A stretch of DNA of 64,000 bases from Epiperipatus broadwayi. Lineage: Eukaryota > Animalia > Onychophora. The stretch's first letter is position 1; each line of letters begins with the position of its first letter. Shown here piece by piece: positions 9,810 through 48,165 of the stretch. Under the pieces are notes generated by a model. That model searched no databases, was not told where the DNA came from, and was given only the letters and a program-made list of their open reading frames with translations. The position numbers were made by a program, and so were the translations under genes. The stretch is from assembly GCA_028023455.1 (NCBI GenBank), contig JAQFVV010000011.1:62001-126000 (forward strand), given 5' to 3'.

Positions 9810-10290
9810 AATTAATCATCTGAGCATTTTTGGGAAGTCTTAAGTTCCCATAATCATAGCTCGTTACCAATTGAGAAATGCTTGTAATAAAGCCTTATGT
9901 AAATTTATGAAATTTGACTATAGTGTCCATTTTTTGGAAATGCAGAAAAGCAAGCCTCTCTTCTGTTTGTAGCTGTGAGGTCGCTTAATATATAGCAGGT
10001 TTCTTTGACCTTGCATTTAGCATCATTTCTTTCAGTGCAGATAATCTTGGAAGTTGTTGATTGAGAGGCGTAGCCAGAAGTTCTTTCATGCTCAGCAAAT
10101 ATTGAGCCCCTTCTGTCTTACTTTTAATTCTGTTGTATAGATATCTATGCTATGCCACTCTAGTAGCAATATTAGTCTTAGTTTCTCTATAGTAGGTTGT
10201 GTGGCAATTAATAAATAAACTTTGTATTATACTGTATTTTTGACCTGAATATTGCTATGATAGCTTTTATGACATTATCTTTATAGACTT
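9810..10290 (-). mobile_element. Penelope-like element 3' fragment (GIY-YIG endonuclease remnant, family A)
   Basis: Frameshifted translation YYRETKTNIATRVA*HRYLYNR...SIFAEHERTSGY...ICTERNDAKCKVKETCYI...ATNRREACF aligns with the ORFs at 14159 and 46329. Confidence 0.8.
9818..9861 (-). ncRNA. PLE hammerhead-like motif with A3:U8 core (G12A decayed)
   Basis: AGCT|ATGATTA|T|GGGAA-CTTAAGAC-TTCCC|AAAA|ATGCT|C|AGAT. Confidence 0.6.
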
Positions 10291-12612
10291 TACTCTATGA
10301 AATCATCAGTCTTACAAAATAGCCACTATTAAAAACATGGTGGATGCTTTATAAAAAAAAACAGACTGTACCTGACTTATGGAAAAGCTATATATTTTTT
10401 AATTGGTTGCTTTAATAAGATTTTCTTAAGATTTAATGTAAATTAAACAAAACATTTTAATATTAAATAAATAAATGTGAGAAATTCACAATTGAAAAAT
10501 TGGAAAAATGTTTGAAACAAACCAGCCTGTTTAATACACTTCAGATATGTACCTGGCAAGATATTAATACATTTAGCTTTATTAATTTTAAATCTACTTG
10601 TTATATTTGATATGTGAATTTGACAGTATTATGGATAATTATAAAAATTATTAATGGCAGAATTACTTACTTCATATAAATATACCTCATAATAAAAATT
10701 ATGGATTATTAAATATAAAATGTAGAATTACTTCATTTGCATAAAATGCTCATAATATAAATTACAGTTTAGTTAGGCATAGTTATTTATTTATATAAAC
10801 AAATTTAAAGTTGCCTTTTTTTTTCAATTTTTAATTGTGAATTTGATAGTGTTACAGTCAAACATAATAGTTTTTTTCATTGGGTTTTCAATTTAACACA
10901 TGACAACTTTACGGACAAACATACATTCACGTGAAAATATGTGACAGCCTTATAGACAATTACACATTCACATGGATTTTATATATACTAAAAATGAATT
11001 TTAAAAAAATCATTATAGTGAATGGTTGATTTTTAATCAAAATAGTAAATACAAAATAATAATGAACACTATATGTAGAGAGAAAATGTATATTAATTAT
11101 ATTCAAATATATAATTATTTAATTGACAGTATCTATAATTATATGCAAATAAATTGAGTTTATGCAACCTCCAATAAGAGTATTGGAAATATTTAGTCAA
11201 TCCGCACAACTAACATCAGAAAACACTTATTTAAATTAAACAATTCTTGTTAGCTATTTAGATGAATACCAGATATTTAACAATAATTGTTTGATTCAAA
11301 ATACTGTACATCCTGTCCTCAGAGTGACAGTTTTTTTACTTGATTGTAGTGATCATAAGCTGTATATTATTAGCCTCATGATTGGCAAGTGACATCAATT
11401 CCATTTATTTATTTATATGTGCAGTATAATAAATAATCATAACTTTAAATATTTGTAATTGAAATGGAAGTAACTATCTCCTACTGAGTTATATAATCAC
11501 ATGATCACCCCTTCAATACGTATAGTGACTTTTGTTTAAAAAAATACCAAACTTATTATAAAAAAAACTACAAAAAAAACCACCTCTCTATTTAAATTAT
11601 ATATAAAAAACCACACTCAACATCTCAAATCTCTAGTTCAAAATGCTTGAGTCTGACTTATTTATATATAAATTTAAGCATAGAAGAAGGTGGGTCCCAT
11701 CTTCTTCTGATAGTTCTGGCTTTTGTGTTTAGAATTAAGAGTTTTACATGCAGTCATTGTTACATCTGATTGGCTGTCACATAAGCATTTTTAAAGCACA
11801 TCTGCCGAAGGTTTTAGCGTTTCACGTTATTACTATATAATTATGTTAGATTTAAGTAAAAGTTACAATATGGATAAATTCAATCTTAGTATTTTTATTT
11901 TACATTGATCCTTTAAAATCTGAATTTGTTATTTTCTACACTGAATTCTCATAAATAAATTTTTTAAAAAAACCTTTATTTTCTATAAAATAATGATATA
12001 TTTTTAAAATATTGTAATGGTAATAAATATTTTAGCAATAAATACTATTGTTAAAATATCTTAGTTTAAATTAAATAAAAAGATAACATATTTTAAATTT
12101 CAATTTAAAATTGTTTAAACTTTATCAGTTTTAAAAATATTGTTAATTTTATTATTATGTAGACAGCAAATTAATTATTCTAAAACTGGTGATCAATTTT
12201 CAATTTATTGATCAATAAAAAGTAATTGATTGGGTTTATTATGTAATGGTGTCTAGACGTCATGGTGTCTAGACGTATAAAAAGAAAAAAAAGAGGTGAA
12301 CTAATAGTAAGAGAGAGAAAAATGAGAAAAAGAAACAATAATAAGATGAACTGTTGTTTCAAGTAAAAGTTTGTAAAAACTTATAAAATGTAATATGTTT
12401 TATTTTTGTAAACAGTAAAATAAGTTAATCTTGCTAAAAAGGAAAATAATATATTTAATAGTAATTTAAAAGGATGGAGTATGTTTAAACTAAATTACTT
12501 TGTTTGAGATATTATTAAGTCTGAAACTTCAATTCACAATTAAAAATGCTATTGAAAAAAATTTGCAAGAACCTATTATTGTTAATAATTGGAAAAACCA
12601 TGAAGGCAAGGA

Positions 12613-12724
12613 TTTTTTTTTTCATATGTCATAGCATCAGCCGGGAGGCTAACCCACAACCGTCTGCAACCAACTACTTGCTTGCAAGGCAGCTGCGATG
12701 ACCTCTTGGCTAACAACGCTTGAC
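12613..12724 (-). mobile_element. tRNA-Gly-derived SINE, long-spacer subfamily
   Basis: tRNA-like head, tail gctatgacatatg-polyA, TSD ggcaaggatttt on both sides. Confidence 0.85.
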
Positions 12725-13244
12725 AAGGGCAAGGATTTTCAACTTCAATTAATTAAAAGATGCAAATTCTTTCTTGTAAGAAAATATGTTTTGTTTATCT
12801 CTGCTTTATTGATTAATTTAAATAATAACTTGATTATGAAGAGGAGCAAAAATAAATAAATGGTGATAATTTATATAAAGTAATTAAAGTAGTTTACTGA
12901 ACTTTAAAATAGTTTATGAATGGAGAAAGTCAACTAAAAATAATTGGTTTTAAAACTAAAGTAACTTGTATTACTCAAAGTAACTTTATAAAATTATAAA
13001 AAAGAATAAATGCTTGTTGTATATTTAATAATTAAGGAATATTAAGTAAATGAATATGACGATAAATGTTTACTCTAGATTATATTAAATAAAAGCTTCT
13101 TTCAAGAAAGAACATTTTGTTTAGCAAGTAAGATTATCTTATAGTATAAAATATTAAACTGATAAAAAGTTAGCAAGAAAAGTTATAATTTTTTATTATG
13201 ACAATTTTTGATAAAATAATATTTTACCAGATAATAAAATTAAG

Positions 13245-13505
13245 TCATCATCATCATCATCATTATCAACCATTATCAATCCACTGCAGGATGAAGGTCT
13301 CTCCAAGTTTAATCCATCTTCTCCGATCTTTAGCTTCTCTTCTCCACATCACCCCTGCACACTTTCTTATTTCATCCATCCATCTCACATGTGGTCTCTT
13401 TCTGGGTCTTTTATAATCTCTTGGAATCCAGTTTAAAATTTCAATTGTCCATCTATTATCATCTCTTCTAACAATATGTCCAGCCCAACTCCACTTCAAT
13501 CTTAT
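13245..13505 (-). mobile_element. RTE-clade LINE, 3' end
   Basis: ORF 13266-13499 KWSWAGHIVRRDDNRWTIEILNWIPRDYKRPRKRPHVRWMDEI is the typical RTE C-terminus; (TGA)n tail. Confidence 0.9.
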
Positions 13506-14168
13506 ATATGTTTATTTCGGAATGAAATAATTATTAAGTAAAATATAATGGAGAGAAAACGTGGAATTAAGAATGATTTATGAATTAATACTACATATAG
13601 TAAAGTTTATAGTAGAGAGAGATTAATACTCAAATATGTTTTGGAAATTTATTTAACTACAGTCATATTAAACTTCTATAATACTCGTGCATATTTAATG
13701 TGTGGAACATATTCAGATCTGAAAGATTAGATAAAGATGCATTAAATTTTTAAAGTGTTTTATTGAAATATTATTAGTGATTTTTAAATGTTTTTACACA
13801 GGATCATGAAAGTTGCTAGCAAGTGGAGAAATAATATTAGTAACTCGCAAGGAGGCGTGAAGTATTATGCTAAAGACTATAATGATGCGGAACTATGAAG
13901 AGGAATAAAAAAGATAAAGATATATTTTTTTGTTAATTTTATGGAAATGTAATATTAGATGTTATGCCTAGTAAGAAGGTAATAATATTAGATGTATTTA
14001 ATTTGAATATTTTGATATATTAATATATTTTATATATTTAAGGTTGTTTTTTTTTATTTTTAAAAATGATGATAATAAGAAGTATGCTTAGAAAGTTAAT
14101 GCAGTATACACGAGTGTTGAGAAAAAGGAGAATATGAGTAAAACAAGACTGTATAGTTATGTTAAAAG

Positions 14169-14730
14169 GTAAAATCCCCTACATTTCTAAAATATCTAAC
14201 AAACTAATGAAAGCATTAACCGATAAATTCAACATAGCATTTAGAACTCCACCTAATTCTAATAGACTGATTAACAACTCTAAAGACCACATTGATCGAT
14301 CGTTCACCCCACACGTGGTGTACTCCATTGCCTGCCCTCAGGCCAGATGCCATGCTATATATTATGATGAAACAAAAGCTACAATCAACACTAGACTGGC
14401 CCAACATCTTTACATGTATAACAGAGCTCAGAGGAACAGCAACACAGCTTCTGTATTTTTGGAGCATGCTAAACAATCTGGACACAACTTCACATCTGCC
14501 AATCCTATAATATTGTGCTCAGAATCAAATGATCACAAAAGAAAAATAAAGGAGGCATTTTACATTAATGGAAACATCCATGCTATTAATAGGAAAGACA
14601 CGTGCTTCGAAATCTTGAAGAAATTGGCTACGTAATACTAGCTTATTTGAATATTTGCATATATTTTACTATACATTTTATGAAGGCTATAAATATGAGG
14701 CATGGATCCTTGAAAACATTAAGCTGATAA
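14169..14730 (+). mobile_element. Penelope-like element 3' fragment (GIY-YIG endonuclease, family A)
   Basis: ORF 14159-14635 IPYISKIS...HVVYSIACPQARCHAIYYDETKATINTRLAQH...EHAKQSGHNF...KRKIKEAFYI...AINRK. Confidence 0.9.
14685..14725 (+). ncRNA. PLE hammerhead-like motif with A3:U8 core (G5A decayed)
   Basis: GGCT|ATAAATA|T|GAGG-CATGGAT-CCTT|GAAA|ACATT|A|AGCT. Confidence 0.5.
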
Positions 14731-17700: not shown

Positions 17701-18064
17701 TATAATTATTTCAATGTATAAAATTTTCTCATTAAAAAAAAAATTACTTGGAAAGTAAAAGATAGCATTACAAAATGACAAATAAACTTTTGAAATAGTT
17801 TGTGATATGTAAAAACAGTGTTTCACCAATTGGTTTAAGTTAACACTTTTCCAGCCTTTTTTCCTTTTTATTTTTCCGGAGTTGTAGCCATCAATGAGTA
17901 CAGAAACTTAAGACATGCACTCTTACTATGCAAGCAATATGCAAACACCCTTCCTTTATCAGGTCAGACAGAACCATTAAATACATGGATCTCCATGCTT
18001 ATGCTGACAATATGGTAGAATAGCAAATTCTCCATACTGTAGTGCCACCTAGTGCAAACTATAG

Positions 18065-18236
18065 TAATAAATGGATGTTAGAAGATTTATGCATAAAACA
18101 CACTTATCTAGTTCCTACTCATTCAATATACCCAGACTTGTTTCTAGTTTGTGGTTTTCATCAGTGAGGATTTTTGGATGTGTAGATATTAGACAGGGAT
18201 TTTATGCACAAACCTTCTAGCATCTATTGATTATTA
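18065..18236. repeat. Small fold-back with ~35-bp imperfect inverted ends enclosing a decayed hammerhead (18131-18168, minus)
   Basis: taataaatggatgttagaagatttatgcataaaa / ttttatgcacaaaccttctagcatctattgattatta; minus strand CTCA|CTGATGA|aaaccacaaacta|GAAAC-AA-GTC|TGGG. Confidence 0.6.
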
Positions 18237-18934: not shown

Positions 18935-20320
18935 CCATAATCATCATTTTCAATTATTTGCTTTTTTCTTTACAGTACACTAACAGACTTTCTTATTTTA
19001 TCCATCCATCTCACATGTAGTCCTTTTTATATCTTACGATTCAATTTAAAACTTCAATTGTTCATCTATTATCATTTCTTCTAGAAATATGCCCAACTCA
19101 ATTTTAGTTTCTTAATTCTTTCAATAATGCTTGTTTGTTCTCTCACTCATGCATTTCATTTTGATCTCTTCTAGTTACTCCTAACATTCATCTCTCCAAA
19201 TTATGTTGGGTGGTCTGAAGTCTCTATATTGTTTTTCTGTTAAGTGTCCATGTCTCAGATCCATAAGTAAGAACTGGTAAAATATGTTTTTTAAAAATCT
19301 TTCTATTTAAACACATATAGGATACATTTTCTTTTAATATTAAGTTATTTTTATCAAAAATATTTTTCCAAGTTTAATTCTATGGTTATTTTATTCATTA
19401 TGTTTACTGACAAAGATATTTATAGTTTTTTTTTATGTGTCAAAGTGTCAGCCGGGAAGTAAACCCCAGGACAACTGCTTGTAAGGCAGCTGTGCTAACC
19501 ACTCGACCACCAATGCTTGATGAGACATTTATAGTTGTTAACTTCTAATTCATGATTGTCAATCTTTATTTTTTTCTGAGTAAATCCATTGAACATTACT
19601 TTAATCTTTTTAGCATTTATCTTTAGTCCTATTCTCATACTTTCATCTGATAACTCTTGCAAAACTTGCTGAAGTGCTGAAGCATTATTTGCAAAAGTAA
19701 CTACATCATCAATATATCTGATTTAAATAATTTCCATTTACCTTTATTTCAATAGTTTCCATTTTAATTTACAAAATACTGCTTCTAAAACTCTTACAAA
19801 AGGTTTTGAAGATGCAGAACCTGTTATACATCTTCTCTATGTTAATCTTCTTAGTATCATTGTATAATCCAAATCATTAATGTTGCATTTTGATAAATAT
19901 TATTAAGAAATGGATATGCTTATAGAATCAAATACCACTTCATAACCTACAAAACTAAAGCCTATATTCATCATTATTTTTGATAACTTCTCTCAAAACT
20001 TGGATGTGAATCACTGTGCTAAAACACTTTTAGATAAAGCTTTATATTATTTCTATTTTTTTTATCCAATTCTGTGAGCATGTTAATAATCATGTTCTCA
20101 AATCCTCTCATATAGATCTTAGTTTTATTTTCCTGGGCTTCTATTTTCACTTTAGCTTGGGTAATCGTATATATAACTTTAGAACCAGCTGATCACTTTT
20201 TTATAATAATTTAAAATGTGTATATAAAAACTCTAATATTTTTTTATTTCTTTAATACATAGAATGCTCATTCCTCTTTCCACCATGTAGCTTTCCTGTC
20301 ACTGCAATTTACTTTAATTT
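18935..20320 (-). mobile_element. Degraded RTE-clade LINE (RT and C-terminus)
   Basis: Minus-strand remnants SSKPFVRVLEAVFCKLKW, HILPVLTYGSETWT, LGVTRRDQ; 3' part similar to the 13.3 kb copy. Confidence 0.8.
19426..19520 (-). mobile_element. tRNA-Gly-derived SINE, short (tRNA-length) subfamily, inserted in the RTE
   Basis: gcattggtggtcgagtggttagcacagctgccttacaagcagttgtcctggggtttacttcccggc closely follows eukaryotic tRNA-Gly(TCC); TSD atttatagtt. Confidence 0.85.
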
Positions 20321-21003: not shown

Positions 21004-21005
<2 letters not shown>

Positions 21006-21799: not shown

Positions 21800-24010
21800 T
21801 TGTTGGTTTTCAGACTGCTGTTTATTATCACCATTCTTATTTTAGAAATTCATTAGATAGTTTAAAGATATTATTATATTTATTCTGTCTAAATTTAATA
21901 GACTCATTATTTAAGGAGATCTTGCTTACCTGTTAATACTGCTAATTTAGATACTACTCTTTTTTTTTTTTTTCATATGTCATAGCATCGGCCGGGACAC
22001 GAACCCACAACCGTCTGCAACCAACTACTTGCTTGCATGGCGGCTCCGATACCTCTCGGCTAACAACGCAAGACTACTACTCTTTTAATAATATATTTCA
22101 TGTTTATGGTTTAAGACAGGTAATAGATTTTCTACTAGAGTAACCAATTATAACGAAACTCTTGTTAATATTAGTTTTGACAATACTAATTTTACTAACA
22201 ATTTTGAGGTTATATATAAGATCTTTGATTATTGGATTACTTTCATTCTTTCTTTTGTTATTCCAGTTAAAGCTAAATTTATAATTTTAAGAGATTTTAA
22301 TGTTTATATTTTTTTTGTTATATTGTATTGTTGGTATTAATTGAAATTGTTGGGATAAGAATATTGAGAATTAAATTTATAGAATTCTATGTAATATCTT
22401 GTTGATAAATATGTCTCTGGTTACAAAATATGGTACAAGAGCAAAAAAATCATGGATTACTGCAGTGTTAAAAATATGATTAAGTTGAGAAATAAAGTTT
22501 TAATAAATTTATTAAGATAAACCCTAGGGTAGTTGGGCTTTATATAAGAGCCTGTGCCATTTGATTATGATTGGAGAAAAGCACTTATTTATATTTTTTG
22601 TCTCTTAAATTTAAAAATAATTATTCTCTTTGGAGATCCTTTTCCAAGTGGGGTATTTCTTGGAGTAATTATCCTATTACTGTGCCTTCTCATTTACAAA
22701 AAGTTGATATGTTTAATGTTTTTTTATTCAAAGAAGTATTTTTTCCTGATTCAAACAGTTGATTTTTACTATAAAAAATCTTCATTTAAATATATTTTAT
22801 CAATTTGAAATTGCACCAATAAATAATAAAGTGTTCTTAAAACTACTAAAGCTAATGCTTCTGGTGTTGATGGTCTGCAAGTACTGTATTAAATTTATAG
22901 GCATACTATTATAGGTATTTTCAGCCATTTCAGTTCTCATTCTTATTTTCCATTGTGTTGGAAATTTGCATTGGTAAGATCTATTCCTAAGATAAATTGT
23001 CCTTTAACTTTTTTAGATTAGTATTTTGCCTGTTTATCTTATTTGAAAAAAAATATTTATAATCAAATAAATCTTTTTTTTTTTTTTGCTGTTGTAATTT
23101 TAATGTTTTATCTTTAAACAGTCAGGCTGTAGAAAAGGATATTTTGTATCTATTATCTTGGCTGATTTAACTAATGACTTTGCAAGAAGTATTTATAATT
23201 CAAAACTTGTGGCCATGCTTGACTAGACTATTCCAAGATATATGATAGTCTTTTGGAAACTTCTATTAACCAAATTGAAATATTTAGACCCAGGCTAAGA
23301 TGTCTTGAATGCTAAATGATAGTATCTTATCTGATTCACTTTTAACAACTCAAGTCTTCCCCAGGGCGTTCTTATTGATCTTCTTTTGTATGTTATATAT
23401 ATATCAGATTTTACACATTATTTAAATTTTTCTAAGTCTCATAGTTTTTCAGATAACACTCAGCTTTATATAGATTTTTCAATGAGTTATCTTTCAGAGT
23501 GCCTAAAGAAGCTTGAGTCTGATTTGAAGTTATGATAGAAATATCTAAAAAAAATCATTTAAATTTGAATTATTTGAAATTACTATTATTTTATTTTGTT
23601 AAAGAATTGTTCTTAGTAAATTTGAGAATATGGCCTTAGATATAAATTTGAAAAGATGTATTATATGTATTGGTCAAAGTTGTAAGAATCTTGGCTTAAG
23701 TCTTGGATTCCCAGCTGAATTTCAAAAATTGCACTGGTAGATTCAGTTATCCTTTACCAGATTACAGAAACTATACACTTCTAAATTTCTTTCTAGTTAT
23801 ATAAAACTTCTATTTTCTGATATTTTGGTTTTGTCTTTAATTATTGCGACTTTGTCCAAGATCCATACTTAAGCATTTCTCACTGTCTGACTATTCAAAA
23901 AGTTCTAAATGCATGTTTGACATTTGTATGTTCTCTCATGTAACCCATTATTTTAAATTATGTAATTGGATTAAGGTGAAAGATGTAGAAATTGTATTTG
24001 TGTTGTACAA
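21800..24010 (+). mobile_element. Degraded L2/CR1-type LINE ORF2 (endonuclease and RT)
   Basis: Remnants VYGLRQVIDF.TRVTNYNETLV (EN), KANASGVDG...YFPLCWKFALVRSIPK, SSLPQGVLIDLLLYVIYISDF...FSDNTQLY (RT); start approximate. Confidence 0.75.
21960..22074 (-). mobile_element. tRNA-Gly-derived SINE, long-spacer subfamily, inserted in the L2
   Basis: Near-identical to the 12.6 kb copy, B box ggttcgtgtcc, TSD tactactctttt. Confidence 0.85.
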
Positions 24011-28405: not shown

Positions 28406-28510
28406 TTTTTTTTTCTCATGTGTCATAGCATCAGCCGGGAAGGAACCGCTAACCTGGGACAACTGCTTGTAAAGCAGCTGTCGTTGACCTCTCGACTACC
28501 AATGCTTGAC
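28406..28510 (-). mobile_element. tRNA-Gly-derived SINE, intermediate subfamily
   Basis: gcattggtagtcgagaggtcaacgacagctgctttacaagcagttgtcccaggttagcggttccttcccggctgatgctatgacacatgag-polyA. Confidence 0.85.
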
Positions 28511-32660: not shown

Positions 32661-33066
32661 CTGTTTTTTAATCATGAAATATTAATAATATCCATTAATA
32701 TTATTATTAAAAGTCAGTCTTGATTCTTTATTCTCTTAATGACTTTTTATTTTATTCAACCTACTGTGATCTTATCATGCTTTCACTACTGCAGTTCAAA
32801 CCTATAAATGTAATGTGTATTATGTGTATGCTTAATTATTATTTTCCTTATTCAAAACTGGCAAATTTATACAGGGATGCACCAGTAGTATCCAGTGTCT
32901 ACGTGCAAAACTTAATCCCCCTCCCCCCAGTATTCCTTTCAATAAAAAATCAGTTTATGAAAATGTATCAGTAAGTAAAAATAAAATACAAAATATATTA
33001 ATTTTAAGTTTATTGACAAAAAAACTGATACACTCAAGCACATATATGCTGAAAAGATAAATAATC

Positions 33067-33110
33067 ACCAATATATGTATTTCATGCTGAACCAGCAATC
33101 ATCAGTTGGT
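33067..33110 (-). ncRNA. Minimal type-I hammerhead, unit 1
   Basis: ACCAA|CTGATGA|TTGCT-GGTTC-AGCAT|GAAA|TACATAT|A|TTGGT. Confidence 0.75.
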
Positions 33111-33537
33111 CCAGATTATCATCTCCCACATATATATACTATAAGTGCTCAGATATATATTAAAATAGACAATCCTCATACTTTAATGGACAGGTTCCAA
33201 TCTACTACACACTCCAACTCTTCAACCGTCCATCCAATTGAAAATCTGATGATGGAATGCTCAAAGGCCACCCTGAGGCCGAGATTCTTGTCACACCCAT
33301 GTTGACCTAAGATCAATCTGAACCCCACATGTACAGGACATAATCCATTAAATACATATGCAGGATGGGCAGACATCTCTACAATGTAATAACTGAAACA
33401 CAGGCTTATTATATATCTGTGTCTATATATGTAATACAGGGTATATGAGCACAGACTTTCAGATGATCCATCACTCTCCACTCTATCTAATAACAGTGAT
33501 ACACTCAAGCACATATATGCTGAAAAGATAAATAATC

Positions 33538-33581
33538 ACCAATATACGTATTTCATGCTAAACCAGCAATCATCAGTTGGT
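33538..33581 (-). ncRNA. Minimal type-I hammerhead, unit 2 (perfect palindromic stem III ATACGTAT)
   Basis: ACCAA|CTGATGA|TTGCT-GGTTT-AGCAT|GAAA|TACGTAT|A|TTGGT; predicted cleavage after AUA, between 33543 and 33542. Confidence 0.8.
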
Positions 33582-34349
33582 CCAGATTATCATCTCCCAC
33601 ACATATATACTATAAGTGCTCAGATATATATTAAGATAGACAATCCTCATACTTTAATGGACAGGCTCCAATCTACTACACACTCCAACTCTTCAACCAT
33701 CCATCCAATTGAAAATCTGATGATGGAATGCTCGAAGGCCACCCTGAGGCCGAGATTCTTGTCACACCCATGTTGACCTAAGGTCAATCTGAACCCCACA
33801 TGTACAGCACATAATCCATTAAATACATATGCAAGGATGGGCAGACATCTCTACAATGTAATAACTGAAACACAGGCTTATTATATACCTGTGTCTATAT
33901 ATGTAATACAGGGTATATGAGCACAGACTTTCAGATGATCCATCACTCTCCACTATATCTAATAACACTGATACACTCAAGCACATATATGCTGAAAAGA
34001 TAAATAATCACCAATATACGTATTTCATATACCCTGTATTACATATATAATAAGCCTGTGTTTCAGTTATTACATTGTAAAGATGTCTGCCCATCCTTGC
34101 ATATGTATTTAATGGATTATGTCCTGTACATGTGGGGTTCAGATTGACCTTAGGTCAACATGGGTGTGACAAGAATCTCGGCCTCAGGGTAGCCTTCGAG
34201 CATTCCATCATCAGATTTTCAATTGGATGGACGGTTGAAGAGTTGGAGTGTGTAGTAGATTGGAACCTGTCCATTAAAGTATGAGGATTGTCTATCTTAA
34301 TATATATCTGAGCACTTATAATATATATGTGTGGGAGATGATAATCTGG

Positions 34350-34393
34350 ACCAACTGATGATTGCTGGTTTAGCATGAAATATGTATATTGGT
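34350..34393 (+). ncRNA. Minimal type-I hammerhead, inverted unit
   Basis: ACCAA|CTGATGA|TTGCT-GGTTT-AGCAT|GAAA|TATGTAT|A|TTGGT. Confidence 0.75.
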
Positions 34394-35456
34394 GATTATT
34401 TATCTTTTCAGCATATATGTGCTTGAGTGTATCAGTGTTATTAGATAGAGTGGAGAGTGATGGATCATCTGAAAGTCTGTGCTCATATACCCTGTATTAC
34501 ATATATAGACACGGGTATATAATAAGCCTGTGTTTCAGTTATGACAAAAAAAGCAGAAATTACAAAAGGAATGTATAAAAAACAATAAACATGCAAGAAG
34601 GATGCAAAACCAATAAAAATAATTTGGGAAAAAATAAAATAATTTATGTTAAGTGGCAAAAAAATCATTTGCAAATTGCATCTTATATAATTTTACATAA
34701 ATTAACAGATATAATTTTCATATTCATTGAGAATCATTGGGAGTTTCCATGAGAAAAATTCTGATTGACCTGAAGCTTTAGATATTGTAAAAGATAATAA
34801 GTTTTTTTTCTTTAGAATGGAGATTTCCTCTTAACACTTTTATGGATTTTTTAATTTAAAAAAAAAAAATATGAAGAGGTCAGTAGCCTATGGACAGTGG
34901 CTAATATCTAAGGCTTTACTCTTTTGTTTTCTAAGGTAAGATTTTATTATAAAAGTATAGTTTTCTTCTTGATGATACTTCATGTGAAACTCCTCACCAC
35001 ATGTCAAAATTGACATGTAGAATTTTTTCAATATTTTAATAATTATTAAGTAAATATCAGCTTTTAAAACAATTTGATAAATTTACCATAAATCAACTTT
35101 CATTCATTCACATTAAAAAAAAAAAAACTTAAATAGGATTCATTCATTTTTTGAGAAAATTTAAACAAATGTCGTTTATCTTCTGTTGTTCTGATTTACA
35201 AATATTTTTTTTAATCTTTAAAAAGGTCAACTGTGATTTTTAAGAATATTATATTATATGAAGATTTGGTTGTACTCTCATACTTGGTGTTCGCCTAGAG
35301 ATGGCATTGATGCTAATCAAAAACATATACATATAACGATTCTGGGGCCTGACCTAAATGATCGATTTGATTTAAAAAGATCTGATTTCTTAGATTTATA
35401 ATAAAATATTCTACTAACTAATACTATTATATGATGTTAGTTATTTCATTTTTTTC

Positions 35457-38573: not shown

Positions 38574-38606
<33 letters not shown>

Positions 38607-38807: not shown

Positions 38808-39069
38808 AAATAGAGGGATATGAATTTAGGTTTTTCAGTCTATATTCACCCTCCACTTCATCTCAAATAACTGATATACATGACCACATACATGTGGAAA
38901 AGATAACTGATCCCCAATATACATATTTCATGCAGAATCAGCAGGCATTAGTTGGGCCAGATGAGTGCTGGTTTTGCATGAAATACATATATTGGGACTC
39001 ATCTATCTTTTTCACATGTATGTGTCATGTGTATAGGTTATTGAGCTAAATTCAAATTCCTCTATTTAA
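38808..39069. repeat. Palindromic deletion derivative of the 471-bp hammerhead repeat family
   Basis: Two opposed fragments fused at gat (38960-38962) inside the hammerhead core; right arm GATGA|GTGCT-GGTTT-TGCAT|GAAA|TACATAT|A|TTGG. Confidence 0.75.
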
Positions 39070-39235
39070 AATTAGAATACAAACAAAAATTTTTAAAAAT
39101 AATAATAATATAATTAATGAAAAATTGATCAAATACGTTTATAAATATTTGATTAAGTGTGTGATCATTCATTCATTCATTGAAGTAATAAAAAAAAAAA
39201 CTACCACACTTTTATGTTTAAAATAAAGTAAGTAG

Positions 39236-39336
39236 TCAAGCATTGGTGGTCGAGAGGTCAGCGACAGCTGCTTTACCAGAAGTTGTCCCGGGATAGCGGT
39301 TCGCTTCCCGGCTGATGCTATGACACATGAGAAAAA
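39236..39336 (+). mobile_element. tRNA-Gly-derived SINE, intermediate subfamily
   Basis: gcattggtggtcgagaggtc...ggttcgcttcccggctgatgc; TSD aaagtaagtag. Confidence 0.85.
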
Positions 39337-40314
39337 TAAAAAGTAAGTAGCTAAAAAAATTATGCTCTGGACAGTATTCTTTTTTTTTTCTCAATAATTT
39401 CTTTCTCTTATATTAACATAATAGTGATCTTGTTATCAAAAAATTAGGATTTTTCTAATTGTTTTGTTGTTTTTTTAAGTAAGTATCAACCAACTTTTAA
39501 TAGATTTTAAAAAAATTTAAAACATTTAGCATTATGCTCAGAAAATATTTTATTACACTAAATACTGCACAGCAAATTTGAAAAAAGGAAGGACAAAATG
39601 GATTTGCTTTCAACATCACCAAAAAAAATTATTAATATATATATAATCATGCATGAAGCATTGGTGTATTTAAAATTTATGTATAAATTTTACTCTTTTT
39701 TTAAACATAATCCCATATGGTGTTCTGAGAAGAAAAATGGCTGCTTCAATGTGAAAAAAATTGTAAATTTTATTTTTTGAAGGGTAATTAGTCATGGAAT
39801 TAGATATGGCATAGTTTATGGTTTCACTGTACATCTAATTTTAGAACTAAGGTATTCCCATTTCAATAAATAAATTAACAATGATAAAAATATATGACTA
39901 ATGATATATTAAGAATTATACAATATTAGAGATATCTATGACTAAAACTTAACTTTATCTTTCGTTTAATATTAATTTATCACAAAGTATTTAAACTTTA
40001 CTTTTTTGACTTTATTTATTTATCTTATATTAAGCACTGAATATTATTTTAATTAATTGATTTTATCCGTCTTATGCTTTAATATTGGGTATTCATTCAT
40101 TCAGTTTATTTCATATTGACATCTGTATTAACTTATGTATCATCTTTATCCTGGAACATCTTGAAACTGTATAACATTCCCCATTTTAATTTTCTGAATA
40201 TTTTATTAACTTTTATACTAACATTTATGCGGTAGAGACTTTTTATGCATTTCATTAAAGATATAATTTTAACAGTAATAATAAAATATAAAAATACATT
40301 CTATCTAATATACC

Positions 40315-40760
40315 ATAAATATAGGAGATTTGAACTCAGACTTTCAAGCAACCTTCAACTATTCATACTATCTCATACTACTAATACACATGACCACGCA
40401 CATGTAGAAAAGATAAGTAATCACCAATATATGAATTCATGCTGAACCACCATCATCAGTTGGTCCAGATTATCATCCTCCACACATATATAAAATCAGT
40501 GCTCAGTTTATATTAAGATAGTAAATCTTTATACTTTAATGGACAAGCTTCAATATACTCCAACTTCCAATTCTTTAGCCATCCATACCATTGAAAATCT
40601 GATGATAGAAAGCCCAAATTCCATGCCGATGCCAATATTGTTGCTATGCCTATGTTGACCTCATCACTCTGACCCCTCATGTATAAGACAATATCCATTT
40701 AAATACATAGAAGAGGGATGGGCAGAAAGCAAACTTAATGTGTAAGATTTGAAACACAGG
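40315..40760 (-). mobile_element. Diverged near-full-length monomer of the 471-bp hammerhead repeat family
   Basis: Colinear with the unit throughout; decayed hammerhead 40423-40464 (GAAT for GAAA, stem II deletion). Confidence 0.8.
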
Positions 40761-42124: not shown

Positions 42125-42620
42125 CAGTTTAATTGATGTGATAAATGTACTACCCTCACAACTTTGACACAAATCACTTAATGAAAGTATATTAATAATT
42201 TTTATTAGTCATTCATTAGAGTAGAGATTATCCACTTAATATTTCTATAATGTAACTTTCACTACACCACTTTCACACAAGGTATGAATGATTTTTATCC
42301 ACTTTTAACATCTTGTGGATGGGGTGTAATCATAAACATATGACTAAAAACAGACATGAAAAAGTTATATGATCCCCAAAATTCACATTTGTGCTGCACC
42401 AGCATTCATAAGTTGACTCAGATCACATCTCTTACCCAAATCTTTATCATTGTTCACTATATATTGAGAGTCAATTACTACAGTTTAATTGATGTGTCAA
42501 ACATGTTGCCCTCACAACTTTGACATAAACCATTTAATAGAAGTATATTAATAATTTTATTAATCATTAATTTGACTAGAGATTACCCATTTAATGAGTA
42601 ATATTTTTTGTAATGTGGCT
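42125..42620 (-). repeat. Old 356-bp-period tandem related to the hammerhead repeat family
   Basis: cagtttaattgatgtg at 42125 and 42481; intervening decayed hammerhead on minus strand CAA|CTTATGA|ATGCT-GGTGC-AGCAC|AAA (42375-42415); related fragments near 42850 (inverted) and 48490. Confidence 0.55.
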
Positions 42621-43049
42621 TATATATATATATATACTGAACAATAATAAAAATAGGGGTTAAAGAGTCTGTGGCCTGGGCCAACTGAAAAGTACTGGTT
42701 CAGCAAGAAATGTTCATCTTGAGAATCATACATCTTTTCACTGTTCTTTAATCATATGTTTATAATTATACCCTTCCACAAGATATTAAAAATGAATAAA
42801 AACCAGACCCTATCTTGCATGAGAATTATCTAGAGAAAGTTACACTACAGATATATTATTCATTAAGTGGATAATCTCTAGTGTAATAAATGAGTAATAA
42901 AATATTTATTGATAATACATATTTGTTTTTTATTGTGTTACTTTGCATTTGAGAAGTATCAGGCAGAGAAACTTATGATAGTAGATTTATCATTTAATTT
43001 TGGCTAGGAATTTAATTGTAAAATGGTATATTTAGTTTAATACATATAT

Positions 43050-43730
43050 ATTGCATAAATAAAAAAAGCTGATCAACTTACATGGGCTGCAAATATATAT
43101 ATATATATCCACATTTTATTGTCGGGCAAATTAAAAATAAAATGATATCCTGCTTTAAGTCTGGGATTTAAATAAAACTTAATTTGTCTATAGAAGAAAC
43201 AATGACGAACTCTTCATTCAAACCAGATTTAATGGCAGAAACCGTAGTTTGAATGTATACTTAAATGAATAATACAACATCTCATTTTATAAACCATTAC
43301 AAATAATAAATGAAATTAAAATAATTATAAATATTTGAATAAATACTGCTAAAGTATATGTAAATGAAATAAAGCTGACCAACTTCCATATACTATAAAG
43401 ATCTAAATGTATATATCCGTAATTCATTGTCAGAAAAATCTAGGAAAAAATGGTTCACTATTTTAATTTAAGCCTGGGATTTAAATAACGCTTGATTTAT
43501 CTGACAAGTATGGAAATAAGAGTGGACTTAAAACTCAAACCAGATTTAATATATAGAATTAAAAGTTTGAACTTATAAAAAATCATGCATTATTTAAATT
43601 TTAAGTCCTAGAGTAAAACTGTTGTACTGTTTTATTCTCGATTTTTCTGACAATGAATTATGGGAGTATAGATGTTTTTGCACCACATGAAAGTTGGTTA
43701 GGTTTCTTTCATTTATATATACTTTATCAC
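43050..43730. repeat. ~306-bp-period direct pair plus a partial inverted third copy
   Basis: aagctga(t/c)caactt...ctgggatttaaataa...tcaaaccagatttaat at ~43066 and ~43372; inverted fragment 43630-43728. Confidence 0.7.
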
Positions 43731-44214
43731 TGCATTTACTAATAACATCTGAGTTCATCCATATATAATTCATAGTACTAATATATTAATGTTTTAGCTA
43801 GGTCACACTAGCCATCAAGTAGGTGATGAATATTATAAAAACTGTTATAGAAGTACTGCAAGCACCGATGTATAACAAGACTAAACACTCCATCAGTAGA
43901 CTTATCTCTCCATTATCATTTCTATTTCATCTTGCTATAAATATGAGTGTTACAAGTTCTTGAAAGCCACTAAGTCATATTTAATTTATAGAAAAAACGA
44001 GCTTCTTTATAGTTGCATATAAGTGCACTTATAACATTCTATATAAGATAAGTATAAACAGTTATCATCATTACAAAAGAAAATAGGTACAGAAAAATTT
44101 AAAAATATAATGGTTTGGATTGGTTAATAAAAATGTGATCAAAAGCTATTCAGTTTAATGGGTTTTAAAAAATTCTTTCAAATGGAAAATAATTTACATG
44201 TATTATCATGTTTG

Positions 44215-44510
44215 TTGATATAACTGGTCTTTTTAATGATCTTATTGGCTTTTCCAACATTAGTGCAAGTGTCATCTCTGGATAGGTTCCTGGTGTTTAT
44301 GAATTCTCTATTATAAACCTTATCCATAGCACAGAGAGAAAAGGCTGATGATGATGAGTATTAGTTATCAGCATTAATAGATTCCTCTCTCCTAGCACTT
44401 ATGTAATGATTGCTCATACATATATATGAGGCTCCACAAACTCCACATTAAATCTCACAAACTCCATGACCATTAAGAGGAATTAAGTCCTTAGGCTTGG
44501 ATGACAGAAT
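44215..44510 (-). mobile_element. Penelope-like element GIY-YIG remnant, family B
   Basis: LSSKPKDLIPLNGHGVCEI*CGVCGASYICMSNHYISARREES...SSSAFSLCAMDK...NTRNLSRDD. Confidence 0.65.
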
Positions 44511-45237
44511 ATTACCAGTTTTTTGGTTAGAAGTACATGCCATTTTTATATTATAACATTTTAAAATATGACTAATACTGTCTATAATTCCTTTTATATA
44601 AGTACAGATTCTAGTAGTTGTATTTTTTTCTTGTCTTTTTATTATGATTGTTTTAAGGCTTCGTTTATAATTCCATTAGTTAATAAGATATTATTTGCTT
44701 CCCCCACATATGATTTACATGAAAAACTAACTGCTCTGGTGAAAAGAGTTTTGATTACTAAAGATATCTAAGCAGAGTGATGATGGAATACAAATTGTAA
44801 ATATCTGTCTGTATACATACATTTTTGTGAAAGTGAGAAAAGCTAAATGATTATACTGGTTTTTGATGACAATTATAAAAAGGAAGGAAAGCTGCATGAT
44901 TCTCTGCTTCTATTGTAGACTTAATATGAAAGATGGAAATTATTTATATGTGAAATCATATATTTTATCTTTACTATGTTACTGGAGAACAAACATGTCA
45001 TCTATGCATTATTTAAGCCAAACAAGATGGAGTAATTTGTTATTATTATTACTATAACTTATTTTTATTGCAATGCTGATCTTGTACCCTTTCCTTTAAT
45101 ATTTATTCCTTTGTTATTTGATCATATTTGTGATATTGGGAGTAGATGATATATGCCATTACCGTATATCATCCCTACTTTCATACCATTAAATTTATAT
45201 ATATATCACCACTTTTGAGAGTATTTCTCACATGACT

Positions 45238-45518
45238 GGTTTATTGAGAAAATGAATACTCTCAAGCCATAGCATTTTTTTTTGTTTTGTTTATAGAGAA
45301 AAGAGTATATGTTTTCTCTCTTTTACTTTATTTTCTTATATAGAGGATTGTATGAAATCATATATTTAAATTAGTCATACTATTTGTTTTGAAGCGTTTT
45401 AAGACAATCCAATATATAAAAAAATGATGAGAGAAGAAATATGCTCTTTTCTCTATAAACAAAACAAAACAAATTGTCTTACGCCTTATCGTCAGAGTAT
45501 TCACTGACTTAATAAACC
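45238..45518. repeat. Imperfect fold-back (~85-bp arms)
   Basis: ggtttattgag..tgaatactct...tttgttttgtttatagagaaaagag / reverse complement at 45429-45518. Confidence 0.65.
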
Positions 45519-46976
45519 ACACATATTAGAAATAATCTTGAAGTGTTATATATTATTAAAACACTGGACATATATATATAATTATTACTAATGGGCTAGA
45601 ATAGAGGTGAAATAAGGACTCTAAAAGATTATAGCTTAAATTTGTCAGTTCTAATTCTCAATCATCATATAACCTTCCCAGTGACAACATTAAAATAATT
45701 ATTCCAGAATATTATCACTATCTATTATAGCAAAAATATTTACCAGTTATAGGTGAAAGGATAGTGGAGACCATAGTTTTTGGACATTAAAAAATGTTAT
45801 GTAGTCATAATTTGTGTTGCCAAGAAAATATAAAAATTTGTAGTGAGCAAAGACACATTAATATATCATAATTTACATATCATTTACTCATGTGAGAAAG
45901 ACATTTGACTCAGTTAAAAAGTTTTTATTTTAATGCTTGAAATTATATGACTGATTTCCAAAATATATTCATATTATATAACTTCTCTACAATGGTAAAA
46001 TATGAAGCGTTTGATATTACAGCTAGCTTTAAACAATAATATGCATTAACTGCGATTTGGTTTTCTAATTTTATGATGGTCATCATTGGAATAACTTACA
46101 AATGGTTTCATAAAGCAATTTCCATTACAATATAGGTTTGATAGTGGAATTTTTAAATTTAAAGTGATTAAAATCAAGAACTTCATTCTCTTCTCTTCAA
46201 GATTTAGAGGTTTCTGGTAATTGTGATCTTTTAACAATTTAAAATAAAATTATCAATAGAATGTTTTTAATGCAATCTGTAATGACTACAGTTGAGTAAT
46301 TAATATTCAAAACATTCAAAGGTTTTTATCAGCCAATGATAGAAAAAAAAAGACATCTTTTAACTTGTATTAGTGTCAGCTTGAGAGTGCAATTTAATTT
46401 AAGTATTTTGGAGATTGCAAAGGACGATTCTTTCCGGTTTATTGCACAATTGTCATTTGCAATAAAGCACGCCTCTTTAATTTTTCGTTTCATATTATTA
46501 TGTTCAGTGCATAGTGCCCTTGTCATAGTGGGTTCAAACACATGGCCTGTTGTTTTTTGGTGCTCGAAGAATATGGATCTGTTTTCATCGTTATTTATAG
46601 CTCTCCTGTACAAATAATGATATTGAGATGTTCTTGTTGTAATGTTGGCACGGGTCTCCCCATAATATGCCGCTCTACATCCATTGGTTGGGCATGAAAT
46701 TTTATAAACTGCTTGGTGATGTATTTTGTGTTTGGTATTGTTTATCATTCCGTTTGTTGATGGTGGGGTGTGGAATCCTAGTTCGAAGGACTCGGCAAAT
46801 ATTTTATAATATTTCCTAGCAATTGATGGTATGTACGGTAGCATTATTCTGGGTTTATTGTTTTTGACAGTGTCAGTTTGTAATTTAGTTTGAAATTGCC
46901 TGATATTTTTATAGATAACGTTGTGTGAAAATCCAATCTTTTCTAGATTTTTAATATAATTTGTGAGGTTCGTTTT

Positions 46977-47459
46977 TCAGTTAGCTTCAAATTTACATAG
47001 TCTGTGATTTCTGTGCAGGGAGGAAGAGAGTCCAGCCAATTTATATGAGTTGGGTGAGTTTGAGTTTGGATGTATAAATCCTCGAATTTCTAGTGGCTTA
47101 ACTGTCATAGCATATGTAAGTTGGTGGGGATCTCTATGAACTTGAATATCTAGATAATTAACATTGTGCTGAAGGTTTTCATGTATGCAGTTAATTGTTA
47201 AAGAGGTTTGTGTTTGTAGCTCTTTTTGAATATCCATTATTATTTGTTCTGGTGCAACTATGAATACATTGTTAACATAGCGCGTATATATTAAGTTTCG
47301 TTCAATTGTGTAGTACTTAGTCAATATTTGCCTTTCAAAATGATTGAGGAAAATACTAGATATTATTCCACTTATTGGGAGGCCCATTGACCATCCGTCA
47401 TTCATTTTAAACCATTTACCATTAAATGTGGCCACAATATTTTGATCTATCCATTTCAA
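46977..47459 (-). pseudogene. PLE reverse transcriptase fragment, catalytically dead (YVDD to YVNN)
   Basis: ORF track translation; both catalytic Asp codons show G-to-A changes. Confidence 0.85.
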
Positions 47460-48122
47460 AAATTCTACTATGAAATTCAGCTGACCGAAAAATGAACCTC
47501 ATAAATTATATTAAAGATCTAGAAAAGGTTGGATTTTCACACAACATTATCTATAAAAAGATCAGGCAATTTCAAACTAAATTACAAACTGACACTTTCA
47601 AAAACAATAAACCCAGAATAATGCTACTGTACATACCATCAATTGCTAGGAAATATTATAAAATATTTGCTGAGTCCTTCGAACTAGGATTCCACACCCC
47701 ACCATCAACAAACAGAATGATAAACAATACCAAAGACAAAATACCTTCTGATCAAATAGCCCAAGCAGTTTATAAAATTTCATGCACAACCAATGGATGT
47801 AGAGTGGCATATTATGGGGAGACCTGTGCCAACATTACAAAAGAACATTTCAACCTCATTATTTGTACAGGAGAGCTATAAATAATGATGAAAACAGATC
47901 CATATTCTTCGAGTACAAAAAAACAACAGGCCATGTGTTTGAACACACTATGGCAAGGGCACTATGCACTGAACCTAATGATATGAAATGAAAAATTAAA
48001 GAGGCGTGATTTATTGCAAATGACAATTGTGCAATAAACCGGAAAGAATCGTGCTTTGCAATCTCCAGAAAATGGTCGTTATAAATTTTACATAAACCAC
48101 AGCTAAACTTCAGTTAAAAATA

Positions 48123-48165
48123 GGCTAAGATTATGGAGGCTCAAGATCTCTGAAAGCGCTAAGCC
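48123..48165 (+). ncRNA. PLE hammerhead-like motif with A3:U8 core (U4A)
   Basis: GGCT|AAGATTA|T|GGAG-GCTCAAGAT-CTCT|GAAA|GCGCT|A|AGCC; palindromic stem III AGCGCT. Confidence 0.6.

What the first reader, a model, noticed from the sequence alone, without database searches (positions are those of the whole stretch)
9818..48165. A Penelope family whose hammerhead has swapped the C3:G8 core pair for A3:U8
Seen: three diverged PLE remnants carry the same motif about 80-100 nt after the final AINRK-type peptide: 9818-9861(-) AGCT ATGATTA T GGGAA..TTCCC AAAA ATGCT C AGAT; 14685-14725(+) GGCT ATAAATA T GAGG..CCTT GAAA ACATT A AGCT; 48123-48165(+) GGCT AAGATTA T GGAG..CTCT GAAA GCGCT A AGCC. All three have A3, U8, A9 and an extra U. 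Each copy's core lesion is private (G12A, G5A, U4A), stem II differs in sequence yet still pairs, and stem III points to a palindrome (AGCGCT/AACGTT). Established: 3-8 is a Watson-Crick tertiary pair in the active hammerhead, compensatory swaps can keep activity, and an extra base after A9 is tolerated. Inference: the consensus AUGANUA-U...GAAA is a family-specific non-canonical ribozyme that CUGANGA pattern searches would miss.
Basis: partly seen in the sequence, partly recalled or inferred. Interest (0 to 1): 0.85.

Follow-up and report, generated by a model that had tools for sequence, protein, structure and literature searches.

The report
Penelope hammerhead motif with A3-U8 core
Three dead copies of a Penelope-like retrotransposon each carry, just behind the endonuclease gene, the small dimer-type hammerhead ribozyme motif typical of these elements, but with the core C3-G8 pair replaced by A3-U8. 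This is a real, inherited, high-copy variant of a known ribozyme type, and whether it cuts RNA is untested.

Summary
The three motifs are at the stated coordinates. Each lies 50-90 nt behind a decayed GIY-YIG endonuclease reading frame of a Penelope-like element (PLE).

All three read A3, U8, A9 plus one extra U, and each has one core lesion of its own (G12A, G5A, U4A).

- **One clade.** On an endonuclease tree the window copies form one clade (SH-aLRT 100) against 95 PLEs of other organisms. The lineages are only 40-47% identical in protein.
- **High copy number.** About 5,700 DNA contigs of the organism lie on copy 3 at 80% likeness or more. Nearly all covering contigs read T where copy 3 has its odd A4, and no C3 or G8 alternative is among the best-supported differences. 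The family core is therefore AUGAUUA-U.
- **Helices.** RNAalifold recovers helices I and II, and four of eight pairs change on both sides.
- **Relatives elsewhere.** Related PLEs of other organisms carry the same layout in the tail behind the reading frame, with canonical CUGAUGA.

The extra nucleotide after A9 and a U3-A8 core covariation in PLE hammerheads were published in 2014. A3-U8 was not found in the searchable literature, and cleavage is untested.

This scan has reported the same variant several times on other pieces of this genome. Verdict: new variant of a known kind, moderate interest.

The parts
9818..9861 (-). c1 hammerhead-type motif: helix I AGCU/AGAU (one G-A mismatch), core AUGAUUA + U, helix II GGGAA/UUCCC, AAAA (G12A lesion), AUGCU, C17. 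Predicted cut between 9822 and 9821.
9932..10206 (-). c1 GIY-YIG endonuclease remnant, frameshifted and with stops; 41-47% identical to c2 and c4
9715..9931 (-). c1 3' tail. It aligns with the c2 and c3 tails and shares the blocks TTTACATAA and AGCTTCA..TGCATAAAGCACAAT with c3.
14159..14635 (+). c2 endonuclease-domain ORF (158 aa) ending in ..HAINRKDTCFEILKKLAT
14685..14725 (+). c2 motif: GGCU/AGCU, core AUAAAUA (G5A lesion) + U, helix II GAGG/CCUU, GAAA, AACAUU (one CpG-to-CpA step from the palindrome AACGUU), A17. Predicted cut between 14721 and 14722.
46406..47459 (-). c4: inverted, longer partner of c3 with RT and EN remnants. It is 92% identical to c3 over 46406-47001; its tail and motif are missing.
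47467..48287 (+). c3: 5'-truncated PLE copy (EN remnant 47621-48081 plus tail). Repeat depth falls sharply after 48287, which marks the 3' end.
48123..48165 (+). c3 motif: GGCU/AGCC, core AAGAUUA + U (A at 48128 is private; other copies read U), helix II GGAG(G)/(U)CUCU, GAAA, perfect palindrome AGCGCU, A17. Predicted cut between 48161 and 48162.

Best explanation
These are three dead insertion remnants of one clade of Penelope-like retrotransposons. The clade's 3' tail carries the minimal, dimer-type, type-I hammerhead motif known from PLEs. In this clade the core tertiary Watson-Crick pair C3-G8 was replaced once, in the clade's ancestor, by the isosteric A3-U8.

The pair was then kept under selection while the lineages diverged to 40-47% protein identity.

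By analogy with published PLE hammerheads, the RNA would form helices I and II within one motif. Two motifs, from tandem or pLTR copies, would form helix III between their palindromes. The RNA would then cut after H17, with G12 as base and the 2'-OH of residue 8 as acid, probably slowly or only with the element's protein.

- Shown: the motif, its position, its inheritance, its copy number and the helix covariation.
- Inferred: the dimer, the cleavage and its role in processing the element's RNA.
For: - **Motif and position:**
- **Single clade:** the four window copies form one side of a branch with SH-aLRT 100 against 95 other PLE endonuclease domains. Path lengths between lineages are 1.0-1.25 changes per site.
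- **Retained core:** A3, A6, U8, A9, the extra U, A13, A14, A15.1 and U16.1 are identical in all three copies. U4, G5 and G12 are each lost in one copy only.
- **Family state from DNA of the organism:**
  - 5,745 contigs were laid.
  - At 48128 the share reading T is 6,697.7 of 6,789.9 depth, in 36 contigs.
  - The same T is read in three further runs, including one of a second organism.
  - One contig reads GGCUAUGAUUAUGGAG directly.
  - No C at 48127 or G at 48132 appears among the best-supported differences.
- **Helices:** RNAalifold predicts exactly helices I and II. Of the pair cells, 95.8% are paired and 4 of 8 pairs change on both sides. Slid controls give 20-71% paired.
- **Relatives in other organisms:** they have the same layout in the tail behind the reading frame (70-95 nt behind the stop in L004 and L005, about 245 nt in L013), with canonical CUGAUGA plus one extra nucleotide (L004, L005, L013).
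- **Hallmarks listed in PMC4209133 that are present:** a nucleotide between 9 and 10.1, G10.1, a 4-5 bp helix I, and a palindrome at helix III (perfect in c3).
- **Activity of swapped pairs:** swapped 3-8 pairs retain activity in vitro according to PMC3088659 (citing its reference 32). A C3G/G8C double mutant partly restored cleavage in a PLE hammerhead (PMC11167929).
- **Other core types in the same window:** canonical C3-G8 motifs and a U3-A8 pair of motifs. Positions 3 and 8 are always Watson-Crick compatible.
Against: - No cleavage evidence. The runs are held only as contigs, which show no molecule ends (table 6: none). At least one contig (run X7, library kind not on record) spans the predicted cut site.
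- Published minimal PLE hammerheads cut poorly even as dimers (PMC4209133). One needed the element's protein (PMC11167929). An A-U pair is weaker than C-G.
- Catalysis was not needed for insertion in vitro (PMC11167929), and Naiad PLEs thrive without hammerheads (PMC8557442). Conservation therefore need not mean cleavage.
- Only three sequences support the covariation, and 28 of 500 shuffles reach the observed score.
- Helix III of c1 is not palindromic. 10.1-11.1 is G.U in c2 and c3.
- The full list of variant positions from the read laying was truncated (480 not shown), so minority C3/G8 copies cannot be excluded.
Confidence: 0.7

Rival explanations
1. The motif descends from a hammerhead but no longer cuts. 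In this clade it is kept as a folded RNA element of the 3' tail that the reverse transcriptase/endonuclease protein recognises, or that positions internal initiation of reverse transcription. The A3-U8 change was tolerated because catalysis is dispensable.
For: - The whole tail of about 230 nt is alignable between lineages that share only 40-47% protein identity. It has other conserved blocks besides the motif: TTTACATAA and AGCTTCA..TAAAGCACAAT.
- Hammerhead catalytic mutants did not affect PLE insertion in vitro, and no RNA-seq ends were seen at the cut site (PMC11167929).
- Naiads lack hammerheads (PMC8557442).
- Contigs (library kind not on record or uncertain) run across the predicted cut site.
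Against: - Every catalytic position other than 3 and 8 is retained in the majority of lineages: U4, G5, A6, A9, G12, A13, A14, A15.1, U16.1 and H17 not G.
- The 3-8 change is exactly compensatory. A mere protein-binding hairpin would not need these unpaired core letters.
- Swapped 3-8 pairs are reported as active (PMC3088659, PMC11167929).
Confidence: 0.25
2. Chance or decay: these are ordinary canonical CUGAUGA hammerheads, or random AT-rich sequence, that drifted to A3 and U8 independently under the AT mutation pressure of this genome.
For: - The genome is 25-30% G+C.
- A relaxed descriptor finds A..U-type look-alikes at about 1.7 per 64 kb by chance. One such chance hit is at 13723.
- Each copy is visibly decayed.
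Against: - C-to-A and G-to-U are transversions, and both occur in all three lineages.
- The motifs are positionally homologous within alignable tails.
- Nearly all of the 36 DNA contigs covering the site agree with AUGAUUA.
- The expected chance of a descriptor hit in a 60-nt slot behind a given reading frame is about 8e-4.
Confidence: 0.04

Closest known systems
Minimal (dimer-type) type-I hammerhead motifs of Penelope-like elements (Cervera & de la Pena 2014, PMC4209133)
   Same: - Location in the PLE tail/pLTR just behind the RT-EN reading frame.
- Type-I order of elements.
- Short helix I (4 bp).
- One unpaired nucleotide between A9 and 10.1, and G10.1.
- No loop-loop contacts.
- Helix III reduced to a short palindrome that can pair only between two copies.
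- High copy number, mostly as solo truncated remnants.
   Different: The core reads AUGAUUA instead of CUGAUGA (A3-U8 for C3-G8). Helix II is 4-5 bp here, against 7-8 bp in the S. mansoni families.
U3-A8 core covariation in nature: Cercyon-type PLE motifs of Schistosoma mansoni (about 1,300 hits, PMC4209133) and several hammerheads in Perreault et al. 2011 (PMC3088659)
   Same: The tertiary Watson-Crick pair 3-8 is replaced by another Watson-Crick pair in a whole family. Such motifs escape CUGANGA descriptors. A U3-A8 example also lies in this window (513-853).
   Different: The orientation of the pair differs: purine at 3 and pyrimidine at 8. Residue 8 is a uridine, not a purine. The phrase 'A3-U8' with 'hammerhead' returned no paper in the searchable library. 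Lunse et al. 2017 could not be read.
Engineered 3-8 swap mutants (C3G/G8C in Martick & Scott 2006 as cited, and in the Anolis PLE hammerhead, PMC11167929; Przybilski & Hammann 2007 as cited in PMC3088659)
   Same: Compensatory exchange of the 3-8 pair, with activity partly kept.
   Different: Those are laboratory constructs. Here the exchange is fixed in a natural retrotransposon clade.
Canonical-core dimer-type hammerhead of the 471-bp tandem/inverted repeat in the same window (retrozyme-like; 33050-33125(-) and copies)
   Same: Type-I motif with an extra U after A9 and a palindromic helix III (AUACGUAU), in the same genome.
   Different: C3-G8 core, a longer helix I (5 bp), a non-coding tandem repeat, and no adjacent RT-EN frame.

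Membership tests
Hammerhead ribozyme, minimal type-I PLE class | Type-I order: helix I 5' strand, 7-nt core strand, helix II hairpin, GAAA, helix III, U-H, helix I 3' strand | tested here: met
   Read directly. RNAalifold predicts helices I and II at exactly these places. 95.8% of cells are paired, and 4 pairs change on both sides.
Hammerhead ribozyme, minimal type-I PLE class | Conserved core letters C3 U4 G5 A6 G8 A9 / G12 A13 A14 / A15.1-U16.1, H17 not G | tested here: inconclusive
   C3 and G8 are not met by letter: all copies and the family majority read A3 and U8, which can form the same Watson-Crick pair. All other letters are present in at least 2 of 3 copies, and each copy has one lesion (G12A, G5A, U4A). 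H17 is C, A, A.
Hammerhead ribozyme, minimal type-I PLE class | Unpaired nucleotide between 9 and 10.1, and a G10.1-C11.1 pair (hallmarks listed in PMC4209133) | tested here: met
   There is an extra U in all three copies and G10.1 in all three. 11.1 is C in c1 and U (G.U) in c2 and c3. A canonical relative (L004) also has G.U there.
Hammerhead ribozyme, minimal type-I PLE class | Short palindromic helix III that allows a dimer | tested here: inconclusive
   c3 AGCGCU is a perfect palindrome and pairs between two copies in the cofold. c2 AACAUU is one CpG decay away from AACGUU. c1 AAUGCU is not palindromic.
Hammerhead ribozyme, minimal type-I PLE class | Site-specific self-cleavage after H17 | not testable with these tools
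   Runs are held as contigs only. No table of molecule ends could be made.
Hammerhead ribozyme (Rfam models) | Match to an Rfam hammerhead covariance model | tested here: inconclusive
   No hit at gathering score or at E up to 10. The same search also misses canonical-core minimal hammerheads in L004 and at 33050-33125, so the blank carries no weight.
Penelope-like element (EN+ PLE) | Single reading frame with RT followed by a C-terminal GIY-YIG endonuclease | tested here: met
   - RVT_1 is a weak hit on 46977-47459(-) (E 6.7e-4).
- The 171-aa EN fragment finds 169 proteins (E up to 0.001).
- Four of those hits were fetched. Their gene calls carry HTH_animal (all four), DUF8422 and RVT_1 (three each) and a faint GIY-YIG (one).
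- Pfam GIY-YIG itself is not hit by the window fragments.
Penelope-like element (EN+ PLE) | Typical insertion anatomy: 5'-truncated copies, an inverted head-to-head partner, and copy number rising towards the 3' tail | tested here: met
   c4 and c3 are inverted head to head at 47459/47467. Summed contig depth is about 10-fold higher over 48004-48287 than over the RT part.

The most novel reading that the evidence does not exclude
A deep clade of Penelope-like elements runs on a catalytically active hammerhead whose core pair is A3-U8. Together with the C3-G8 and U3-A8 motifs in the same 64-kb window, one animal genome would then hold three of the four Watson-Crick versions of the 3-8 tertiary pair in working ribozymes. 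That would make it a natural covariation series for the pair that positions the general-acid ribose.
Probability: 0.45. Interest if true: 0.55.

Novelty: new variant of a known kind. Interest (0 to 1): 0.4.

Why it matters
Searches that fix CUGANGA undercount hammerheads. In this genome they would miss a family with thousands of copies.

A natural, long-maintained A3-U8 core would extend the known natural covariation of the 3-8 pair (so far U3-A8). It would also give a ready-made test of how much the identity of residue 8 matters beyond pairing.

It also bears on an open question: whether PLE hammerheads are kept for cleavage or for another RNA role. Here the compensatory nature of the change argues that the active fold is under selection.

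The gain is incremental, because the ribozyme class, its host element, its extra nucleotide and 3-8 covariation are all published.

Tried and rejected
- **Rfam at gathering and permissive thresholds:** no hammerhead. Controls showed it also misses canonical minimal PLE hammerheads, so the result was dropped as evidence.
- **Relaxed descriptor scan of the window:** many chance hits in AT-rich DNA. The hit at 13723 and the canonical-looking hit at 3891-3925 are chance.
- **Word-based protein search and exact cluster look-up for other copies in this genome:** nothing found. The protein collections do not hold this genome's PLE frames, so a genome-wide covariation alignment could not be built.
- **Relatives fetched through the representative search:**
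  - P0001 (L001) is an intron-containing gene model, and I could not place a hammerhead in the first 300 nt behind it.
  - I saw no hammerhead motif in the tails of L002, L003, L006 and L014.
- **MAFFT/RNAalifold on six motifs of different helix II length:** the alignment failed and gave no structure.
- **Homodimer MFE folds:** these are dominated by alternative extended duplexes for c1 and c2 and are not decisive.
- **BLAST of the three tails against the window:** no further copies.
- **Papers that could not be read:** Lunse, Weinberg & Breaker 2017; Przybilski & Hammann 2007; Nelson & Uhlenbeck 2008. The in vitro rate of A3-U8 cores is therefore not cited from source.
Full report
**What is in the sequence**

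Written in hammerhead numbering they are:

| Copy | Coordinates | Helix I 5' | Core + extra nt | Helix II | 12-14 | Helix III | H17 | Helix I 3' |
|---|---|---|---|---|---|---|---|---|
| c1 | 9861-9818(-) | AGCU | AUGAUUA-U | GGGAA/UUCCC | AAA(A) | AUGCU | C | AGAU |
| c2 | 14685-14725(+) | GGCU | AUAAAUA-U | GAGG/CCUU | GAAA | ACAUU | A | AGCU |
| c3 | 48123-48165(+) | GGCU | AAGAUUA-U | GGAG/CUCU | GAAA | GCGCU | A | AGCC |

All three have A3, A6, U8, A9, one extra U, A13, A14, A15.1 and U16.1. Each has one core lesion that the others lack: G12A in c1, G5A in c2 and U4A in c3.

tblastn with the window's own reading frames finds four endonuclease-domain remnants:
- c1 at 9932-10206(-)
- c2 at 14159-14635(+)
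- c3 at 47621-48081(+)

c4 is the inverted, head-to-head partner of c3 at 92% nucleotide identity (46406-47001 against 48070-47467). Its homology stops just behind the reading frame, so c4 has no tail and no motif.

The adjoining frame of c4 has a weak RVT_1 match. The EN fragment finds 169 proteins elsewhere. Four of those hits were fetched. All four carry HTH_animal, three each carry DUF8422 and RVT_1, and one carries a faint GIY-YIG, the make-up of Penelope-like elements.

**Is it more than chance?**

A relaxed hammerhead descriptor is not significant by itself in this DNA of about 27% G+C. Allowing one core mismatch, it gives 48 hits of all core types in the window. For A..U cores it gives 4 hits against 1.7 expected from first-order Markov simulations. 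One such hit, at 13723, is plain AT-rich sequence.

The weight comes from homology:
- The three tails align over about 230 nt, from the stop codon to the 3' end.
- The motif sits at the same place in each.
- Invariant columns are concentrated in the motif: 18 of 44 against 42 of 234 elsewhere in the tail (Fisher p = 0.0012).

**One clade, and an old swap**

On a maximum-likelihood tree of the EN domain, the four window copies form one side of a branch with SH-aLRT 100 against 95 PLE proteins from other sources. The paths between c1, c2 and c3/c4 are 1.0-1.25 changes per site, and identities are 41-47%.

Unconstrained nucleotides would be saturated at that distance. Yet the core letters, including A3 and U8, are shared.

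The simplest reading is one C3-G8 to A3-U8 exchange in the clade's ancestor. The motif was then kept by selection while the lineages were active. The private lesions came after each copy died.

**Family state from the organism's own DNA**

The window stretch 46300-48400 was laid against Logan contigs of one DNA run and three further runs at 80% likeness.

- 5,745 DNA contigs were placed.
- Summed depth is about ten-fold higher over 48004-48287 than over the RT part. It collapses after 48287, which fits many 5'-truncated copies and marks the 3' end.
- At 48128, the odd A4 of c3, 36 DNA contigs carrying 6,697.7 of 6,789.9 depth read T. So do all or nearly all contigs in the three other runs, one of them labelled as a second organism.
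- No difference at 48127 (A3) or 48132 (U8) appears among the best-supported differences.
- One contig reads GGCUAUGAUUAUGGAG outright.
- Other contigs read U instead of A at position 17, which stays within H.

Two caveats apply. The list of differences was truncated (480 not shown).

**Structure**

RNAalifold, run on the three motifs without guidance, predicts exactly helix I (4 bp) and helix II (4 bp) and leaves the core strands open.

Counting pairs on that structure:
- 95.8% of cells are paired.
- 4 of 8 pairs change on both sides, three of them in helix II.
- Slid controls give 20-71% paired.
- With three sequences the shuffle control is weak: 28 of 500 shuffles reach the observed score.

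The helix III segment differs between copies:
- c3: a perfect palindrome, AGCGCU, which pairs between two copies in a homodimer fold.
- c2: one CpG-to-CpA step from AACGUU.
- c1: not palindromic.

10.1-11.1 is G-C in c1 and G.U in c2 and c3.

**Relatives elsewhere**

Tails of related PLEs (30-36% identical in EN) were fetched from other sources.

| Locus | Helix I 5' | Core + extra nt | Helix II | 12-14 | Helix III | H17 | Helix I 3' | Distance behind the stop |
|---|---|---|---|---|---|---|---|---|
| L004 | GCC | CUGAUGA-A | GAGAAU/AUUCUU | GAAA | GCU | A | GGC | about 93 nt |
| L005 | AUAU | CUGAUGA-C | not resolved | GAAA | UAU | C | AUA | about 70 nt |
| L013 | AGUA | CUGAUGA-A | GUCUA/UAGAC | GAAA | CUGU | C | UACU | about 245 nt |

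The window motif is thus the positional and architectural counterpart of the canonical PLE minimal hammerhead.

**Known background**

- Cervera & de la Pena 2014 (PMC4209133) describe minimal hammerheads in the flanking repeats of all PLEs examined.
  - These have a short helix I and a conserved nucleotide between 9 and 10.1.
  - They also have G10.1-C11.1, a palindromic helix III and low in vitro activity as dimers.
  - The paper also reports a U3-A8 covariation family of about 1,300 hits in S. mansoni.
- Perreault et al. 2011 (PMC3088659) report natural U3-A8 covariation and state that swapped pairs had been shown active in vitro.
- For an Anolis PLE (PMC11167929):
  - The hammerhead cut only in the presence of the element's protein.
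  - C3G/G8C partly restored activity.
  - Catalytic mutants did not impair insertion in vitro.
  - No RNA-seq ends were seen at the cut site.
- Naiad PLEs lack hammerheads (PMC8557442).
- The phrase 'A3-U8' with 'hammerhead' gave no paper in the searchable library.
- Lunse et al. 2017 and Przybilski & Hammann 2007 are not held, so priority for A3-U8 cannot be fully excluded.

**Rfam**

There is no hammerhead match at gathering score or at E up to 10. As a control, the same search misses the canonical-core minimal motif of L004 and the canonical-core motif at 33050-33125. The blank therefore says nothing about the core variant.

**Mechanism**

Shown:
- A conserved hammerhead-type motif with a compensatory 3-8 exchange.
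- It is inherited in a PLE clade and is high-copy.
- It lies about 120 nt from the element's 3' end.

Inferred, from the published class and hammerhead chemistry as I know it:
- Two motifs from tandem or pLTR copies pair through the helix III palindrome.
- A3-U8 takes the place of C3-G8 in positioning the ribose of residue 8.
- G12 acts as base, and the chain is cut after H17.
- This is likely slow or protein-assisted, and it processes the element's transcript.

The main rival is that the fold is kept for protein recognition or reverse-transcription initiation without cleavage. I give it about one chance in four. Against it stand the retention of every other catalytic letter and the strictly compensatory nature of the change.

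**RNA evidence**

Two runs flagged 'RNA?' hold the tail at higher depth than the RT part. At least one contig, from a run whose library kind is not on record (X7), runs across the predicted cut site. Contigs cannot show molecule ends, so cleavage in vivo remains open.

**Earlier notes of this scan**

The same A3-U8 PLE hammerhead has been reported and followed up several times on other pieces of this genome. Those notes agree with what I tested here. Two further notes concern my own window, a canonical-core tandem repeat and a U3-A8 fold-back, and I confirmed both by reading.

**Verdict**

- This is a new variant of a known kind, of moderate interest.

Noticed in passing
window 33018-34546; also 58760-59030, 40318-40760, 38897-38995: A 471-bp unit in tandem and inverted copies (97% identical) carries a canonical-core dimer-type hammerhead on the minus strand of the first units. 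It reads GGACCAA CUGAUGA U UGCUG..CAGCA U GAAA UACGUAUA UUGGU, with helix III palindrome AUACGUAU (decayed to AUACAUAU in the first unit). It looks retrozyme-like and has no RT-EN frame beside it.
   Followed up: partly
window 513-853: A fold-back whose two arms each carry a hammerhead-type motif with a U3..A8 core (UUGAGAA and UUGACAA). It has a 7-bp helix II GUCUAUU/AAUAGA(C/U), GAAA (AAAA in the left arm) and a palindrome AUGAUCAU. This resembles the published S. mansoni U3-A8 type.
   Followed up: partly
window 28427-28505(-); related copies 39220-39340, 61574-61690, 12613-12719, 21964-22069, 19426-19520: A tRNA-model match (39.8 bits) belongs to a dispersed repeat family (77-91% identical copies), probably a tRNA-derived SINE.
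   Followed up: no
window 13266-13499(-); similar 18984-19101: A 77-aa ORF (..WAGHIVRRDDNRW..RPRKRPHVRWMDEI..) looks to me like the C-terminal end of a non-LTR retrotransposon reverse transcriptase (not searched). It lies between c1 and c2.
   Followed up: no
window 48080-48083 and 46406: Many contigs of other copies diverge, carry 11-16-nt insertions or join to other parts exactly at 48080/48081, close to where c4 loses homology. This suggests a variable or modular boundary between the reading frame's end and the conserved tail.
   Followed up: no
window 9715-9790(-) and 48205-48245(+): c1 and c3 share a second conserved tail block downstream of the motif (AGCUUCA..UGC(A/G)UAAAGCACAAU). All three tails share UUU(A/G)CAUA about 35 nt upstream of it. 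The function of these blocks is unknown.
   Followed up: partly
window 9836-9843(-), 14697-14709(+): The helix II loops contain short palindromes of their own: CUUAAG in c1 and GGAUCC spanning loop and stem in c2. These drive alternative extended duplexes in homodimer folds.
   Followed up: no
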